Shown here: piece by piece, positions 15,295-47,490 of the stretch | How positions within the stretch are numbered: position 1 is the first letter of the stretch | Layout: every line of letters begins with the position of its first letter | DNA from: Euprymna scolopes | Lineage: Eukaryota | Length of the DNA: 64,000 nt | Direction: 5' to 3' (one strand) | Assembly: GCA_053919585.1 (NCBI GenBank) | Contig: CM132819.1 | Program-made: the position numbers and the translations under genes | The notes under the pieces: model-generated | Database searches by the model: none | Seen by the model: the letters and a program-made list of their open reading frames with translations, nothing else | What the model was told of the DNA's origin: nothing

Positions 15295-16766
15295 GTACCT
15301 ATTTACAATGCCACCCCACAGGACAGAGTTAGACATCAGGGCTGTTTTTTAACGTGGAGAAAAGGTACAAAAATAATAAAAAAAATGCCTCAGTCGTAAA
15401 GCACTGCTCCTTCACCGAGAGAGAACAAGAAATGGAAGTGCAGCATCTGAAGAACAGATACTACACTTTGATCTTGACAAAAAGGCCAGGTATTTATTTG
15501 CTCCCCCACCGAGCAAATTAGGTACAAGGCCGATTTTTAATGTGAGGAGTGAAGGGAAAATGGGGACCTACTCCCCGGGGAGTAGGGGAGCTTGATAGTG
15601 ACAATTGGTATGAAGGGTTGCCCCTACATTGACCAAGGTCTTCTATGTGGGGTTTTCCCCATATATTGTCTTTGCTTGCAGTAGCTGCCGGAACAGATGC
15701 TACACTTTGATCTTGACCAAAAGGTCAAGTATTTATTTGCTCCGCCACTGAGCAAATTAGGCACAAGGACGATTTTTAATTTAAGGAGTGAAGGGGAAAT
15801 GGGGACCAACTCCCCGGGGAGTAGGGGAGCTGGATAGTGACAATTGGTATGAAGGGTTGCCCCTACATTGACCAAGGTGGTATTTATTTGCTCCCCCACT
15901 GAGCAAATTAGGCACAAGGCCGATTTTTAATGTGAGGAGTGAAAGGAGGAATGGGGGCCAACTCCCCGGGAAGTAGGGGAGCTGGATAGTGACAATTGGT
16001 ATGAAGGGTTGTACCTACATTGACCAAGGTCTTATATGTGGTGCGCCCCCACATATGGTCTTTGCCTGCAGTATCTGCCGGAACAGATACTACACTTTGA
16101 GGTATTTATTTGCTCCCACACTGAGCAAATTAGGCACAAGGCCGATTTTTAAAGTGAGGAGTGAAGGGGAAATGGAGACCAACTCCCCGGGGAGTAGGGG
16201 AGCTGGATAGTGACAATTGGTATGAAGGGTGGCCCCTTCATTGACCAAGGTCTTATATGTGGGGTCGCCCTCACATATGGTCTTTGCTTGCAGTATCTGC
16301 CGGAACAAATGTTATTTATTTGCTCCCCCACCGAGCAAATTAGGCACAAGACCGATTTTAATGTGAGGAGTGAAGGGAGGGGGAAGGGAAAAAGGGGACC
16401 AGCTCCCGAGAGGTGGGAAATGGGAGCTGGTTAATGGTCAGGCATGTGGGGTTTCCCCCACATCTGGTCTTTGCTAGTCATAGCTAGTCATAGCTTGCAG
16501 CAACTGCCGGAACAGATGGTATTTATTTGCTCCCCCACCGAGCAAATTAGGCACAAGGCCGATTTTTAATGTGAGGAGTGAAGGGAGGGGGAAGGGAAAA
16601 AGGGGACCAGCTCCCGAGAGGTGGGAAATGGGAGCTGGTTAATGGTCAGGCATGTGGGGTTGCCCCCACATCTGGTCTCTGCTAGTCATAGCTAGTCATA
16701 GCTAGTCATAGCTTGCAGCATCTGCCGGAACAGATACTACACTTTGATCTTGGCCAAAAGGCCAAG
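15295..16766 (-). mobile_element. Array of seven head-to-tail U2-headed SINE-like units: beta 15295-15490; alpha 15490-15729, 15729-15878, 15879-16100, 16101-16310; gamma 16311-16517, 16518-16766
   Basis: The fullest head, CTTGGCCTTTTGGCCAAGATCAAAGTGTAGTATCTGTTC (16728-16766 minus), matches the U2 5' end. Alpha and gamma 3' ends are near-invariant while 5' starts vary. Confidence 0.85.
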
Positions 16767-20629: not shown

Positions 20630-20845
20630 GCCATTTTTAGCTAAGAAAAAAGTAGTATTTGTTCTGATACTACACTTTACCTTTTCCGTCCTCAGTCAGT
20701 AGAGGAAAATCCTTCATGACTGAGACAATTTTAATTTTTGTTCCCATCCAGACTGCCCGTTTTTGGGGAGCTAGATCTCCCGCACATTGAAAACCGATCT
20801 GGTGTCTAACTCTGCCCTCGTGCGGGGGTAAGCAAATAAGAACAT
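20630..20845 (+). mobile_element. Degenerate solo U2-headed unit (beta-like)
   Basis: GCCATTTTTAGCTAAGAAAAAAGTAGTATTTGTTCT head; AAATCCTTCAYGACTGAGACAATTTT and CTGGTGTCTAACTC shared with 760-932. Confidence 0.65.
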
Positions 20846-33469: not shown

Positions 33470-34217
33470 TGTAAAACTGAACGTCTGCGTGTGTGTCTGG
33501 TCACGAATAGGCTCCTATATGGTTGATTATTATAGAAAACTGATCACACATAATGATAGAAGATGTATCGAGACACAGGAATGGGTATGTTTGATCTGGC
33601 ATATCGAGGGTTCATTAAAATTGTGGGGTCTGCGTACGCGCCTGGTCCACAAAGTATGGAAATAAAAAAATAAAAAATAAAAAAACAACGTTTACAAGTG
33701 TTTTTATATAGATGTACAGAAGAATACTTTGATAAGTATGTTTTAACTTAAATAGGGATGGTATAATAAAATTGTGGGGTCTGCGTTCGCACCTAGCCTC
33801 CATAGAATGGAAATAGGCACAAACTTTAATAAAGACTTTTCTTATCTATCTGCGTAAGTATACTTTGATAATTATGTTTCAGTTTGAAGAAATATGGTAT
33901 AATAAAATTATGGGGTGTTCGTTCGCGCCTGACCTCCATAGAATGGAAATATGTCACAAAGTTTAACAAGGTTTTTTTTAATATAGATCCACAGAATATC
34001 GTGATAAGTGTTTCAGTGTGAACAGGTATGGTATAATAAATTATGGGGTTTATCTATTTTATTTTTACTTTAATCATATTTTTCTTTGGTTTTGATGCCC
34101 CCAAATTCAACCCAAATTTACAACCCTTCCGTTTCATAACCTAGCATACTTTCATAAATCAGAGTCTATTTTCCGTAGGCTGGTTTTGAACCCAGTCCAC
34201 GAAGGGTACTTTTGCTA

Positions 34218-41852: not shown

Positions 41853-42628
41853 TATCTATATAATTATAAAACTTAAATGACCTTGTAACGATGTATGTAA
41901 CCCACTTTACGGTTTACGACATCCGGTTGCGCATGCGTGCATGACCTGCGCACTGAAATATTAACGTTATTATTTCGAAATTATTATTTAACATGGGAAG
42001 AGTGGGGTTTTAAATAACTTAAACGTAATACAGAAATGAACGATGTAAAAAAAAAAGCAGACAGTATTAACAATTATTTATTTGGATAATTTAAACGCGA
42101 AAGAACAAAACAAAAGAACAATTCGGAAGCTGAAATATTAACGTTTTATTTCAAAATTATTATTTAACATGGAAAGAGTGGGGGTTAAAATAAACAAAAA
42201 ACAAAAGAACAATTGGGACGCTGAAATATTAACGTTGTTATTTCGAAATTATTATTTAACATGGGAAGAGTGGGGTTTAAAATAACTTAAACGTAATATA
42301 GAAATGAACGATGTAAAAAAGCAGATATATCAAAATTTGAATTAAACTATAATAAGTATTATGGTATCTGTTTACTGCACATTTACCTATAAGTATGGCC
42401 AACCACTTATAATTCAGTAACTGATTTTTTTTCTAAAATAATCAATTATACTAAATAGAACGACTCATAGAAATCTATCTATATTCTTTTTTCATTTTAA
42501 TATACTTCCATAGAAATGTTTCTGTTATGTCAAAAAATTGTTTTTTCTTTACGTCACAAGTGTCACGCTCATACATGAATTCCATAGCTAATATAGCATA
42601 CTGACCCAGCAGGTCATGGGTAGTATAG

Positions 42629-44935: not shown

Positions 44936-47490
44936 GCGATTTCATATTATAGGATATACAATACGACGATTTCATATTATAGGATATACAATACGACGAT
45001 TTCATATTATAGGATATACAATACGACGATTTCATATTATAGGATATACAATACAACGATTTCATATAATAGGATATACAATACGACGATTTCATATTAT
45101 AGGATATACAATAGGACGATTTCATATTATAGGATATACAATACAACGATTTCATATTATAGGATATACAATACAACGATTTCATATAATAGGATATACA
45201 ATACGACGATTTCATATTATAGGATATACAATACAACGATTTCATATTATAGGATATACAATCCAACGATTTCATATAATAGGATATACAATACGACGAT
45301 TTCATATTATAGGATATACAATACGACGATTTCATATTATAGGATATACAATACGACGATTTCATATAATAAGATATACAATACGACGATTTCATATAAT
45401 AGGATATACAATACGACGATTTCATATAATAAGATATACAATACAACGATTTCATATAATAAGATATACAATACAACGATTTCATATAATAAGATATACA
45501 ATACAACGATTTCATATAATAGGATATACAATACAACGATTTCATATAATAAGATATACAATACAACGATTTCATATAATAGGATATACAATACGACGAT
45601 TTCATATTATAGGATATACAATACGACGATTTCATATTATAGGATATACAATACAACGATTTCATATATAGGATATACAATACGACGATTTCATATTATA
45701 GGATATACACTAGGACGATTTCATATATAGGATATACAATACGACGATTTCATATTATATGATATACAATACGACGATTTCATATTATAGGATATACAAT
45801 ACAACGATTTCATATAATAGGATATACAATACGACGATTTCATATAATAAGATATACAATACGTCGATTTCATATTATAGGATATACAATACGACGATTT
45901 CATATTATAGGATATAGAATACAACGATTTCATATAATAGGATATACAATACGACGATTTCATATAATAAGATATACAATACGACGATTTCATATTATAG
46001 GATATACAATAGGACGATTTCATATATAGGATATACAATACGTCGATTTCATATTATAGGATATACAATACGACGATTTCATATTATAGGATATACAATA
46101 CAACGATTTCATATATAGGATATACAATACGACGATTTCATATATAGGATATACAATACGTCGATTTCATATTATAGGATATACAATACGACGATTATAT
46201 ATCATAGGATATACAATACAACGATTTCATATTATAGGATATACAATACAACGATTTCATATTATAGGATATACAATACGACGATTTCATATTATAGGAT
46301 ATACAATACGACGATTTCATATTATAGGATATAAAATAGGACGATTTCATATTATAGGATATACAATACAACGATTTCATATTATAGGATATACAATACG
46401 ACGATTTCATATTATAGGATATACAATACGACGATTTCATATTATAGGATATACAATACGACGATTTCATATTATAGGATATACAATACAACGATTTCAT
46501 ATTATAGGATATACAATACAACGATTTCATATAATAGGATATACAATACGACGATTTCATATTATAGGATATACAATACAACGATTTCATATTATAGGAT
46601 ATACAATACGACGATTTCATATAATAAGATATACAATACGACGATTTCATATAATAAGATATACAATACGACGATTTCATATAATAAGATATACAATACG
46701 ACGATTTCATATAATAAGATATACAATACAACGATTTCATATAATAAAATATACAATACAACGATCTCATATAATAAGATATACAATACAACGATTTCAT
46801 ATAATAAGATATACAATACAACGATTTCATATAATAAGATATACAATACAACGATTTCATATACTAGGATATACAATACGACGATTTCATATTATAGGAT
46901 ATACAATACGACGATTTCATATTATAGGATATACAATACAGCGATTTCATATTATAGCATATACAATACGACGATTTCATATTATAGGATATACAATACG
47001 ACGATTTCATATTATAGGATATACAATACAACGATTTCATATAATAAGATATACAATACGACGATTTCATATAATAAGATATACAATACGACGATTTCAT
47101 ATTATAGGATATACAATACGACGATTTCATATTATAGGATATACAATACAACGATTTCATATTATAGCATATACAATACGACGATTTCATATTATAGGAT
47201 ATACAATACGTCGATTTCATATTATAGGATATACAATACGTCGATTTCATATTATAGGATATACAATACGTCGATTTCATATTATAGGATATACAATACG
47301 ACGATTTCATATAATAGGATATACAATACGACGATTTCATATTATAGGATATACAATACGACGATTTCATATTATAGGATATACAATACGACGATTTCAT
47401 ATTATAGGATATACAATACGACGATTTCATATTATAGGATATACAATACGATGATTTCATATAATAAGATATTTCATATTATAGGATATA
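44936..47490. repeat. 30-bp minisatellite, ~85 copies (GATTTCATATTATAGGATATACAATACGAC)
   Basis: Directly visible; it explains the decapeptide-repeat ORFs on both strands. Confidence 0.97.

What the first reader, a model, noticed from the sequence alone, without database searches (positions are those of the whole stretch)
15295..16766. Head-to-tail arrays of U2-snRNA-headed SINE-like elements
Seen: on the minus strand six of seven units begin with part of CTTGGCCTTTTGGCCAAGATCAAAGTGTAGTATCTGTTC and then switch to non-U2 bodies of three types (alpha, beta, gamma); one unit is truncated into its body. Alpha and gamma units share a near-invariant 3' end (hairpin + AATAAATAC) with no poly(A). A second array lies at 760-1362 and a solo copy at ~20630. 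Known: the head matches U2 snRNA stem-loop I plus the branch-point recognition sequence, and snRNA-headed SINEs (SINEU) are described from crocodilians. Inference: this is a U2-derived SINE family in an invertebrate that builds mixed arrays. Fixed 3' ends with variable 5' starts indicate retrotransposition rather than simple satellite expansion.
Basis: partly seen in the sequence, partly recalled or inferred. Interest (0 to 1): 0.9.

Follow-up and report, generated by a model that had tools for sequence, protein, structure and literature searches.

The report
U2-headed retroposons that target themselves
These rows are short non-coding jumping elements whose front end is copied from U2 spliceosomal RNA; because their helper LINE lands in that same U2 sequence, new copies insert into the heads of old ones and pile up head to tail, in at least 64,000 units across this roughly 5.9-Gb, probably cephalopod, genome.

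Summary
The minus strand carries a 7-unit array (15295-16766) and a 3-unit array (761-1363), and a diverged solo copy lies at 20651-20839 (+). Heads match the host's own U2 (nt ~8-46), including its lineage-specific extra A.

The 5' starts are not random truncations. They fall at U2 nt 38, nt 27 or the head start. Genome-wide, 64,589 exact alpha/gamma/epsilon tails exist, and 69% are followed exactly by ATCTGTTC (84 of the first 100 sampled). That is the published Keno/Utopia landing site, to within one base.

The host's 764-bp U2 gene array holds two APE+RT LINEs. LINE B has many intact copies. It carries its own U2-like head and the same 3' layout as the SINEs (conserved box, hairpin, AAATAC). 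It lands at nt 38 of SINE heads in 11 of 40 junctions, once with a 17-bp target duplication inside an array.

Best reading (0.75): a Keno-like U2-targeting LINE plus non-autonomous elements that carry the landing site in their own head. I rate this a new variant of a known kind (SINEU/Keno); I found no description of it in the papers I could search. Transcription is unresolved. Earlier notes of this scan reported the same family elsewhere in this genome.

The parts
16519..16766 (-). Unit 1, alpha body. The head runs from about U2 nt 8; the 4-5 bases upstream (to ~16771, ATAAC) may be a diverged copy of U2 nt 1-5. It has three copies of the 10-bp CTATGACTAG repeat and the box-hairpin-AAATAAATAC tail.
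16312..16518 (-). Unit 2, alpha body. It starts at U2 nt 38 (C+ATCTGTTCC) directly after the tail of unit 1.
16102..16311 (-). Unit 3, gamma body. It starts at U2 nt 38 (C+ATTTGTTCC).
15880..16101 (-). Unit 4, gamma body. It starts at U2 nt 27 (C+TCAAAGTGTAG).
15729..15879 (-). Unit 5, gamma body, 5'-truncated inside the body (starts ACCTTGGTCAATG). It has no head.
15490..15728 (-). Unit 6, gamma body with a near-complete head. The head carries the compensated stem variant TTGACC....GGTCAA. It is 97% identical to the LINE B head and 91% to the host U2.
15295..15489 (-). Unit 7, beta body with a near-complete head (U2 similarity to about nt 52) and its own tail ...GTAAATAGGTAC. It is the 3'-terminal unit and the most diverged (9.9% from the beta consensus).
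1143..1363 (-). Second array, unit a: gamma, starts at U2 nt 27, preceded by non-repeat flank.
934..1142 (-). Second array, unit b: gamma, starts at U2 nt 38.
761..933 (-). Second array, unit c: beta, starts at U2 nt 27; the 3'-terminal unit.
20651..20839 (+). Solo, older beta-like copy (78-79% identical to the beta consensus). It starts at about U2 nt 34-35 (GTAGTATTTGTTCT) and its tail ends ...GCAAATAA.
2029..2387 (-). Diverged fragment of a related LINE (65-67% nucleotide identity to the ORF2 regions of LINE A and LINE B), about 670 bp from the second array.

Best explanation
The units are non-autonomous retroposons of about 150-250 bp. Each has three parts: a head descended from U2 snRNA (stem-loop I plus the branch-point-binding stretch, to nt 45-47), an unrelated body (alpha, beta, gamma; elsewhere epsilon), and a LINE-type 3' module (a 17-nt box, a hairpin, and a short AAATAC end, with no poly(A)).

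They are copied by target-primed reverse transcription, using the proteins of a Keno-like LINE with an APE endonuclease, a reverse transcriptase and zf-RVT. The LINE's endonuclease and priming step choose sites inside U2 sequence that begin with ATC: nt 1 (ATCGCTTC), nt 25-27 (ATCAAAG), and above all nt 38 (ATCTGTTC).

Both the LINE and the short elements carry a U2 head, so every inserted copy brings a fresh landing site. Later copies land in it, usually at nt 38. This leaves the downstream unit starting at nt 38 directly behind the newcomer's tail.

Beta (and a longer 'delta' element) end nearly all arrays and abut ordinary DNA with duplications of 8-16 bp. They act as the seeds. Alpha, gamma and epsilon almost never abut unique DNA.

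Shown: the U2 origin of the head, the site distribution, LINE insertions in genuine U2 genes and in SINE heads, and one 17-bp target duplication inside an array.

Inferred: that the same LINE proteins move the short elements; that 5' joining is by homology within the head; and that the heads originally arose by co-transcription from U2 promoters.
For: 1. Head and host U2. The heads align to U2 positions 1-46. They are 92-100% identical to the host U2 over nt 8-48 and share its extra A.

2. Site specificity of the short elements.
- Of 83 unit-after-unit junctions in 30 loci plus the window, 52 are at nt 38, 9 at nt 27, 4 at the head start and 18 in the body or elsewhere.
- Genome-wide, 44,773 of 64,589 exact tails (69%) are followed by N+ATCTGTTC.
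- In the first 100 tails on contig C1, 84 abut nt 38, 4 nt 27 and 3 the head start. Six show a recurrent gamma-hairpin truncation, and only about 3 abut other DNA.

3. The site is the known one. Utopia insertions leave U2 starting at nt 39, and the authors state that Keno shares that 3' flank (PMC4640811).

4. LINEs in genuine U2 genes. The host U2 genes form a 764-bp tandem array. Its gaps hold two LINE families of 7.1-7.6 kb, in register with the array.
- ORF2 has Exo_endo_phos, RVT_1 and zf-RVT. Its best solved relative is human L1 ORF2p, at 9e-64.
- LINE A sits at nt 25, with U2 nt 25-47 repeated on both sides.
- LINE B sits exactly at nt 1 and carries its own head, with a GGTCAAG variant also found in SINE heads.

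5. A shared 3' module. The 17-nt box is 17/17 identical between the SINEs and LINE A. All of them have a hairpin immediately after the box; LINE B's folds at -43.5 kcal/mol, z -5. Both end in AAATAC or AAATAA.

6. LINE B lands in SINE heads.
- Three of the first 6 dispersed 3' ends abut nt 38 of a SINE unit.
- In a second sample of 40, 12 abut nt 38: 11 are SINE units (7 beta, 3 alpha, 1 epsilon) and 1 is non-SINE DNA. Most other junctions start N-ATC.
- The copy on contig C6 is flanked by a 17-bp direct repeat that starts at nt 38 of an epsilon unit already sitting behind an alpha tail.
- Conversely, epsilon tails sit at nt 38 of LINE B's own head.
- LINE B forms 7.0-kb tandem arrays of its own.

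7. LINE B is young and probably active. Dozens of ORF2 copies are 97-100% identical, most with an open 1149-1151-aa frame.

8. Events are independent. Gamma and beta halves of 12 gamma-beta pairs show no shared genealogy (Mantel r 0.003, p 0.47). Units in the window's array differ from their subfamily consensus by 1.9% to 9.9%.
Against: - No alpha/gamma/epsilon tail was found at nt 38 of a genuine U2 gene (0 hits at up to 2 mismatches). In genuine U2 genes the two LINE events I saw sit at nt 1 and nt 25, not nt 38.
- Duplications of 11-16 bp flank whole arrays. That also fits a single-event origin, by template switching or by retroposition of a whole array.
- Some architectures recur: gamma-beta dimers of about 400 bp, and gamma / truncated gamma / delta. 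Some arrays contain identical truncated units. Whole-array copying and unequal crossing-over therefore contribute too.
- Three of the LINE B-alpha junctions share one alpha variant and may not be independent.
- No age gradient runs along arrays (Spearman 0.10, p 0.41).
- The tail is not identical to either LINE's. It has the LINE A box and an A-like ending, but the LINE B landing site. The exact partner is not pinned down.
- Poly(A) RNA-seq showed no LINE B expression and no defined start for SINE RNA.
- Membership of the LINE in the Tx1/Keno clade could not be tested by phylogeny.
Confidence: 0.75

Rival explanations
1. Serial template switching. Each array is made in one target-primed event. 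Reverse transcription starts on a beta (or delta) RNA at an ordinary genomic nick, and the enzyme then jumps from one short RNA to the 3' end of the next. Unit starts would then mark the jump points.
For: Target-site duplications flank whole arrays. Junctions to full-length heads carry 1-4 variable extra bases, as template-switch junctions do. Kojima invoked template switching for the 5' additions in SINEU (PMC4494074). No age gradient runs along arrays.
Against: The jump would have to occur at U2 nt 38 in about 84% of cases, and that is the nick site published for U2-specific LINEs. A LINE copy inside an array has its own 17-bp duplication starting at nt 38, which shows a separate insertion there. 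The LINEs insert in register into genuine U2 genes. Units of the window's array differ five-fold in divergence. Gamma and beta partners have unrelated genealogies.
Confidence: 0.1
2. Whole-array retroposition plus satellite-like amplification. A few composite masters (for example a gamma-beta dimer) are read through, retroposed as units using the terminal beta or delta tail, and further multiplied by unequal crossing-over. The nt 38 junctions would then be inherited, not made anew.
For: Gamma-beta dimers of 395-414 bp with flanking duplications recur in at least 8 loci. Gamma / truncated gamma / delta recurs in 4-5 loci. Runs of identical truncated units occur (L018, and C1:12298496 onward). 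LINE B copies inside the U2 array are 99-100% identical, and the LINE also forms 7.0-kb tandem arrays. Three LINE B-alpha junctions share one alpha variant.
Against: Array compositions are very diverse: more than 20 architectures in 30 loci. Junction details differ among gamma-beta pairs: nt 38 with C or A, and nt 27 with C, T or no extra base. Gamma and beta distances are uncorrelated. The window's array has five different unit starts. This process cannot create the first nt 38 junctions, or the match of that site with the LINE's.
Confidence: 0.12
3. Independent chimeric retrocopies of U2 snRNA. Under this reading each head was added separately by template switching onto host U2 snRNA, so there is no head-bearing element lineage.
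For: snRNA-LINE/SINE chimeras of this kind are known in mammals (cited in PMC4494074).
Against: The heads carry derived differences from the host U2 that are shared among copies and with the LINE B head: TTGGCC for TCGGCC, and GGCCAAG or GGTCAAG for GGCTAAG, including a compensated stem variant. The head-body boundary is fixed within each subfamily.
Confidence: 0.03

Closest known systems
SINEU (crocodilian SINEs with U1/U2 snRNA-derived heads; Kojima 2015, PMC4494074)
   Same: Both are short non-coding retroposons with a U2-derived 5' head and no internal pol III promoter. Both have a likely partner LINE with a shared target preference and an snRNA-derived head (Tx1-11_Crp has a U2 head). Both are often found in tandem. 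How either is transcribed is an open question.
   Different: All SINEU have poly(A) tails; these elements end in a box-hairpin-AAATAC module. SINEU and Tx1-Mar prefer a Mariner transposon, not U2 sequence; here the target is the element's own U2 head. The host here is a mollusc-type genome, not a reptile. I had no SINEU sequence, so sequence homology was not testable.
Keno (U2 snRNA gene-specific LINEs of the Tx1 clade; Kojima & Fujiwara 2004, as described in PMC4494074 and PMC4640811)
   Same: Both are APE-type LINEs found inside U2 snRNA genes. The dominant landing site in U2-derived heads (downstream sequence starts at ATCTGTTC or TCTGTTC, nt 38/39) matches the 3' flank reported for Keno and Utopia.
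   Different: Keno is reported from vertebrates, lancelet and hydra. In genuine U2 genes of this genome the two events I saw are at nt 1 and nt 25. These LINEs carry a U2 head of their own and have a very large non-autonomous following. Clade membership by RT phylogeny was not tested.
Utopia (U2-targeting LINEs of the NeSL clade with a restriction-like endonuclease; PMC4640811)
   Same: Same target gene and the same site (nt 39). Both are occasionally inserted in tandem. Relatives (YURE) insert into U2-derived satellites.
   Different: Utopia encodes a restriction-like endonuclease and a single ORF. The LINEs here have an N-terminal APE domain and two ORFs, so they are not Utopia.
Non-autonomous derivatives of site-specific LINEs (for example R2 'SIDE' elements in Drosophila; recalled from memory, not checked here)
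   Same: Both are short elements that keep the ends needed for co-transcription and for 3' recognition by a site-specific LINE, and that use the same target.
   Different: Those elements stay confined to the rDNA target. Here the element carries a copy of the target with it, so the target niche expands with the element.

Membership tests
SINEU (Kojima 2015) | 5' head derived from U1 or U2 snRNA | tested here: met
   Infernal RF00004 aligns the heads at E 1.8e-5 to 3.8e-4. They are 92-100% identical to the host U2 over nt 8-48 and share its extra A.
SINEU (Kojima 2015) | [quoted passage not shown] | tested here: not met
   Units end in ...GAGCAAATAAATAC or ...GTAAATAGGTAC and are followed directly by the next unit or by flank.
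SINEU (Kojima 2015) | Mobilised by a Tx1-type LINE that shares the target preference and, in some families, the snRNA head | tested here: inconclusive
   LINE B shares the landing site, the head variant and the tail layout. The Tx1 clade placement of the LINE, and actual mobilisation, were not tested.
SINEU (Kojima 2015) | Sequence homology to the crocodilian SINEU-1/2/3 consensus sequences | not testable with these tools
Keno / Tx1-clade U2-specific LINE (for the partner LINE) | APE-type endonuclease plus reverse transcriptase | tested here: met
   Pfam Exo_endo_phos (2e-15), RVT_1 (6.5e-31) and zf-RVT. The best PDB relative is human L1 ORF2p at 9e-64.
Keno / Tx1-clade U2-specific LINE (for the partner LINE) | Insertion inside U2 snRNA genes | tested here: met
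   LINE A and LINE B interrupt the 764-bp U2 tandem array, in register with it.
Keno / Tx1-clade U2-specific LINE (for the partner LINE) | 3' junction at U2 nt 38/39 | tested here: inconclusive
   Met in U2-derived heads: 12 of 40 LINE B junctions and about 84% of SINE tails. Not met in genuine U2 genes, where the junctions seen are at nt 1 (LINE B) and nt 25 (LINE A).
Keno / Tx1-clade U2-specific LINE (for the partner LINE) | RT phylogeny groups it with Keno inside the Tx1 clade | not testable with these tools
   No reference Keno or Tx1 sequences were available. The homologue and Atlas searches returned unnamed proteins.
Canonical SINE (pol III retroposon) | Head from tRNA, 7SL or 5S RNA with an internal pol III promoter | tested here: not met
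   Only U2 matched in the Rfam scan at E up to 10; no tRNA, 7SL or 5S match. By established knowledge, U2 genes use an external pol II promoter. The beta body contains a run of 8-9 T.
Canonical SINE (pol III retroposon) | 3' tail shared with a partner LINE | tested here: met
   The 17-nt box is identical to LINE A's. The box-hairpin-AAATAC layout is shared with LINE B.
Utopia (NeSL clade) | Restriction-like (PD..D/ExK) endonuclease at the C-terminus, single ORF | tested here: not met
   ORF2 has an N-terminal APE domain, and a separate ORF1 has a zinc knuckle.
Satellite DNA | Homogeneous monomers multiplied by unequal exchange, with one register | tested here: not met
   The window's array mixes 3 body types and 5 different unit starts. 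Some other arrays do contain duplicated identical units.

The most novel reading that the evidence does not exclude
A strictly site-specific LINE has escaped its dependence on a small gene cluster by making its target portable. Its own RNA, and that of its non-autonomous followers, begins with the U2 segment that the endonuclease recognises. Each insertion therefore plants a new safe landing pad, and the target niche grows with the family: at least 64,000 pads against about 1,200 U2 genes.

The copies sitting exactly at U2 nt 1, directly behind a U2 promoter, would be the masters. They would be transcribed by the snRNA-type pol II promoter from the natural start site. That would also answer how snRNA-headed SINEs are transcribed.
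Probability: 0.35. Interest if true: 0.8.

Novelty: new variant of a known kind. Interest (0 to 1): 0.62.

Why it matters
Four reasons.

1. It extends snRNA-headed retroposons from crocodilians to a mollusc-type genome, and it extends U2-targeting APE LINEs beyond the animals listed for Keno.

2. It shows a simple way for a site-specific retrotransposon to multiply without harming its host gene: it carries the target along. Kojima noted that specificity for a low-copy target such as U2 looks like a poor survival strategy (PMC4640811). Here the family has created tens of thousands of extra targets.

3. It gives a concrete, testable candidate for how snRNA-headed SINEs are transcribed: LINE copies placed exactly at the U2 start site.

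4. It has a practical side. A recent cuttlefish genome paper reports that decapodiform cephalopod genomes contain almost no SINEs (PMC13218726). If this genome is of that group, which I infer only from its size and 46 large contigs, at least 13 Mb of SINE-like sequence is going unclassified by standard pipelines.

Tried and rejected
- **Rfam on the window.** At gathering thresholds there was no hit; the heads are too short to reach the U2 cut-off.
- **RF00004 search of the whole genome.** It failed three times. I replaced it with a pattern search.
- **A Utopia-type (restriction-like endonuclease) partner.** Rejected: ORF2 has an APE domain.
- **SINE masters inside genuine U2 genes.** No alpha/gamma/epsilon tail sits at nt 38 of a true U2 gene.
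There is no divergence gradient along arrays (Spearman 0.10, p 0.41), although this window's array happens to run from 1.9% to 9.9%. The C6 LINE shows that internal junctions can be re-targeted.
- **RT stops at 2'-O-methylated U2 positions as the cause of the discrete starts.** The starts (nt 27, 38) do not fit the positions I recalled from memory for vertebrate U2 (expected starts 26, 31, 41). I dropped this without a formal test.
- **Expression.** I laid poly(A) RNA-seq raw reads of three runs on the LINE B 5' junction.
  - Depth over the LINE 5' UTR and ORF1 was zero.
  - About 1,100-1,300 reads per run covered the head and ran on into beta (most), alpha or epsilon bodies.
  - Upstream sequences were heterogeneous in both orientations, and there was no defined start.
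  - These look like read-through co-transcripts. Poly(A) libraries are the wrong tool for snRNA-type transcripts, so this neither supports nor refutes promoter capture.
- **Homologous LINEs (about 60% identity) in other assemblies.** One is also in a 6.8-kb tandem, but no DNA was served. Two with DNA show no U2 piece.
- **Clade naming.** The homologue search and the Atlas returned only unnamed reverse transcriptases.
- **Whole-dimer copying.** The Mantel test gave r 0.003, so it is not the main source.
- **Limits reached.** Beta tails and the nt 27 class were therefore not counted genome-wide.
Full report
**1. The observation**

On the minus strand, 15295-16766 splits cleanly into seven head-to-tail units:

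| Unit | Body | Coordinates | Starts at |
|---|---|---|---|
| u1 | alpha | 16519-16766 | U2 nt ~8 |
| u2 | alpha | 16312-16518 | U2 nt 38 |
| u3 | gamma | 16102-16311 | U2 nt 38 |
| u4 | gamma | 15880-16101 | U2 nt 27 |
| u5 | gamma | 15729-15879 | inside the body |
| u6 | gamma | 15490-15728 | U2 nt ~9 |
| u7 | beta | 15295-15489 | U2 nt ~9 |

U2 positions here follow human/Rfam numbering. The host U2 has one extra A at AUCAAAGUG, so its own numbers are one higher from there on.

Alpha and gamma units end in the box GGCCTTGTGCCTAATTT, an 8-bp hairpin and AAATAAATAC. Beta ends in GTAAATAGGTAC. None has a poly(A) tail.

The second array (761-1363: gamma from nt 27, gamma from nt 38, beta from nt 27) and the diverged solo beta-like copy (20651-20839, + strand) are also real.

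**2. The head is U2, and it is the host's U2**

The window has no Rfam hit at gathering score. At relaxed thresholds the three long heads match RF00004 at E = 1.8e-5 to 3.8e-4, over model positions 1-46.

The host's U2 genes were found by pattern search: 1,185 matches, mostly a 764-bp tandem array on contig C9. They score 161 bits to RF00004. The host U2 carries AUCAAAGUG, with an extra A relative to the Rfam consensus, and so do the element heads.

BLASTN of host U2 against the window gives 92-100% identity over nt 8-48. The heads also carry derived differences that are shared among copies: TTGGCC for TCGGCC, and GGCCAAG or GGTCAAG for GGCTAAG. One of these is a compensated stem-loop I variant, TTGACC....GGTCAA. 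The head is therefore inherited within the element lineage and not re-copied from U2 each time.

**3. Abundance**

- The gamma unit has at least 2,997 first-look candidates at 92-95% identity, spread over many contigs.
- The exact 16-nt tail GGGAGCAAATAAATAC occurs 64,589 times, against 0 for the reversed control. At about 205 bp per unit this is at least 13 Mb for alpha, gamma and epsilon alone.
- Most hits lie in clusters with spacing of about 150-220 bp.

The genome is 5.9 Gb in 925 contigs. Earlier notes of this scan call it a cephalopod; I did not verify the species.

**4. Unit starts are discrete landing-site scars**

- In 30 fetched loci plus the window, 83 units sit directly behind another unit's tail. 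Of these, 52 start at nt 38 (N+ATCTGTTC), 9 at nt 27, 4 at the head start, and 18 in the body or elsewhere.
- Without any selection by my query, 44,773 of the 64,589 exact tails (69%) are followed by N+ATCTGTTC with no mismatch.
- Of the first 100 tails on contig C1, 84 abut nt 38, 4 nt 27 and 3 a head start. Six show a recurrent truncation at the loop of a gamma-body hairpin (AACCCCACAT), which is plausibly a reverse-transcriptase stall. About 3 abut other DNA.

Alpha, gamma and epsilon units thus almost never end an array. In the fetched loci, arrays end in a beta unit (about 17 cases) or in a longer U2-headed 'delta' element (about 9 cases).

The window's array has only 2 of 6 junctions at nt 38, so it is less typical than most.

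**5. The partner LINE**

Gaps of about 7.9 kb in the U2 gene array hold LINEs in the same orientation as U2.

ORF2 (1145-1149 aa) has Exo_endo_phos, RVT_1 and zf-RVT; ORF1 has a zinc knuckle. The best solved relative is human L1 ORF2p at 9e-64, far ahead of R2. The partner is therefore an APE-type LINE of the L1/Tx1 kind, not Utopia.

There are two families, about 77% identical over ORF2.

- **LINE A** follows U2 nt 1-47. Its 3' end (...AAATAAATAA) abuts U2 from nt 25, so U2 nt 25-47 is repeated on both sides of it.
- **LINE B** starts with a U2-like head of its own, with GGTCAAG where the surrounding genes have GGCTAAG. It sits directly behind a U2 promoter. Its 3' end (...GACTAAATAC plus one base) abuts an intact U2 gene at nt 1.

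LINE B has dozens of ORF2 copies at 97-100% identity on many contigs, most with an open 1149-1151-aa frame. It has 101 exact tails, including tandem arrays with a 7.0-kb period.

LINE A is rare, with 3 exact tails under the filter used; 2 of those are followed by GATCAAAG.

**6. What the short elements share with the LINEs**

Similarity is limited to the U2 head and the 3' module.

- The 17-nt box is identical between the SINEs and LINE A; LINE B has a one-indel variant.
- In all of them the box is followed at once by a hairpin and a short single-stranded end. The SINE stem is 8 bp. LINE B's folds at -43.5 kcal/mol (z -5.0) and LINE A's at z -2.7.
- A LINE B variant (L048) changes both arms of the stem in a compensating way.
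- Units 6 and 7 of the window have heads 97% identical to the LINE B head, against 91-92% to the host U2.

**7. LINE B uses the same landing sites, in SINE heads**

- Of the first six dispersed LINE B 3' ends, three abut a SINE unit at nt 38.
- Of 40 further 3' junctions, 12 are at nt 38: 7 beta, 3 alpha, 1 epsilon and one non-SINE ATCTCTTC. Four are at the start of U2-like heads. About 8 are at the LINE's own 5' UTR (tandem LINEs). About 6 start TCTTAC or TCTTAT. Most of the rest begin N-ATC(T/G).
- The three main sites all begin with ATC: nt 1 ATCGCTTC, nt 26 ATCAAAG, nt 38 ATCTGTTC.
- The C6 copy gives direct proof of separate insertion. Its 5'-truncated end is preceded by a 17-bp sequence beginning ATCTGTTCC (U2 nt 38 onward), and its tail is followed by the same 17 bp, which then continue into an epsilon body. 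Upstream of the first copy is an alpha tail. The LINE therefore landed at nt 38 of a unit already inside an array and duplicated 17 bp.
- Conversely, epsilon tails sit at nt 38 of LINE B's own head on C33 and C4.

**8. Comparison with published work**

- Utopia insertions leave U2 starting at nt 39, and the authors state that Keno, an APE-type LINE, has the identical 3' flank (PMC4640811). The dominant site here is the same to within one base.
- Keno belongs to the Tx1 clade and is reported from vertebrates, lancelet and hydra (PMC4494074; PMC4640811).
- SINEU in crocodilians has U1/U2 heads, poly(A) tails, a preference for a Mariner element shared with Tx1-Mar LINEs (which cluster with Keno), frequent tandem insertions, and an unsolved transcription mechanism. 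One Tx1 family has a U2 head.
- I found no paper describing U2-headed retroposons or Keno in molluscs.
- A 2026 cuttlefish genome paper states that decapodiform genomes have almost no SINEs.

**9. Mechanism and its rivals**

The best account is self-targeting. The LINE machinery nicks U2 sequence 5' of an ATC, mostly at nt 37/38. It primes on the box-hairpin-AAATAC 3' end of LINE or SINE RNA. Full-length cDNAs are joined through the homologous head, which gives seamless junctions. Truncated cDNAs leave a visible duplication.

Beta and delta seed arrays in ordinary DNA. Duplications of 8-16 bp flank whole arrays, for example 16 bp in L004, 13 bp in L006, and 13 bp around a four-unit array in L014.

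Those whole-array duplications also fit two rivals: one-step template switching, and retroposition of whole arrays.

- Against template switching: the switch point would have to coincide with the known nick site. The C6 LINE has its own duplication inside an array. The LINE insertions into U2 genes are in register with the gene array. Divergence in the window's array ranges five-fold.
- Against whole-array copying as the main source: array architectures are very diverse, junction details vary among gamma-beta pairs, and there is no shared genealogy between gamma and beta halves (Mantel r 0.003, p 0.47, n = 12).

Both rival processes, and unequal crossing-over, clearly contribute in places. Recurrent gamma-beta dimers and runs of identical truncated units show this.

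Polarised growth, with the newest unit always at the head, is not supported (Spearman 0.10, p 0.41).

**10. What remains open**

- *Which LINE moves alpha, gamma and epsilon.* The box and the A-rich ending resemble LINE A. The landing site, copy number and youth point to LINE B.
- *Why no short element sits at nt 38 of a genuine U2 gene*. The LINE events in genuine genes are at nt 1 and nt 25. There may be only one or two such events, later spread by array homogenisation.
- *How the elements are transcribed.* LINE B at nt 1 behind a U2 promoter suggests promoter capture. However, poly(A) RNA-seq gave zero depth on the LINE 5' region. It showed only heterogeneous read-through transcripts containing beta, alpha and epsilon units, with no defined start. 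That library type cannot settle the matter.

**11. Verdict**

I file the system as a new variant of a known kind. It works like SINEU plus Keno. It fails the poly(A) feature of SINEU, and its clade membership is untested.

Earlier notes of this scan (s1-275095, s1-247296, s1-259175, s1-268941, s1-279848) reported the same family on other pieces of this genome. I tested their main claims independently here.

Noticed in passing
G000 contig C9, about 168.86-168.97 Mb (loci L034-L043): The host U2 snRNA genes form a 764-bp tandem array, with 1,185 pattern matches genome-wide. The array is interrupted repeatedly by nearly identical LINE B copies and at least one LINE A copy. The LINE copies look to have been spread by array homogenisation rather than by many separate insertions.
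   Followed up: partly
G000 C19:152706164-152792022, C41:27764698-27792733, C10:60635276-60656193: LINE B itself forms head-to-tail tandem arrays with a period of about 7.0 kb (14, 5 and 4 units). In these arrays the next unit starts at the LINE's 5' UTR (CAGCTTGG...), without a U2 head. A homologue about 62% identical in another public assembly is also in a 6.8-kb tandem.
   Followed up: partly
L010, L011, L018, L023, L026-L029 (about 1740-2150 in each oriented locus): A longer U2-headed element ('delta', more than 400 bp) has a head closer to full-length U2 (CGCTTTTCTTGGCC... to GTTCTTAC) and a body containing TCATTC-type short repeats. It ends many arrays, as beta does. Its 3' end and nature were not determined.
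   Followed up: no
L025 (oriented 1039-2345): A divergent relative has an enlarged first stem-loop in its head (ATCGCAAATAGGCCACCTTCGTGGCC...GATCAAAGTG) but the same tail. This suggests several head lineages.
   Followed up: no
46 element heads in the window and loci: Stem-loop I of the head is a perfect 7-bp palindrome in most copies (CTTGGCC TTTT GGCCAAG), unlike in U2. One stem position occurs as G-C (18 copies), A-T (8) and G-T (8). This hints that the hairpin is kept by selection in the element RNA.
   Followed up: partly
gamma units genome-wide, e.g. L018, L026, C1:12298496-12298838: There is a recurrent 5' truncation of gamma at AACCCCACAT. This lies in the loop of the body hairpin ATGTGGGG-GCAA-CCCCACAT and is plausibly a reverse-transcriptase stall point. 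Such units also occur as runs with a 154-166-bp period.
   Followed up: no
LINE B 3' junctions L072, L074, L079, L080, L084, L087: Six LINE B tails abut another repeat that begins TCTTAC or TCTTAT (like U2 nt 45-50) and continues ...GATGGGATGTGTCTCC..GGCTGCAGGGAGACAGGGTAGTA. This may be yet another U2-headed family, or a fourth landing site.
   Followed up: no
RNA runs X23, X24, X38 laid on L042:7002-8301: About 400 of roughly 1,200 head-containing reads per run share one upstream sequence (agreement 0.81-0.88). A single beta-containing locus therefore seems to be highly expressed in poly(A) RNA. It was not located.
   Followed up: no
L015, L004: In some arrays 13-34 bp of extra sequence lies between the 5' target-site duplication and the head. 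This resembles the 5' extensions (transcription from upstream flank) described for SINEU-2.
   Followed up: no
window 44937-47472: A 30-bp satellite with 84.7 copies at 95% matches (unit CGATTTCATATTATAGGATATACAATACGA).
   Followed up: no
window 33720-34049 and 42107-42285: Short tandem duplications with 136-bp and 92-bp units (about 2 copies each, 78-93% matches).
   Followed up: no
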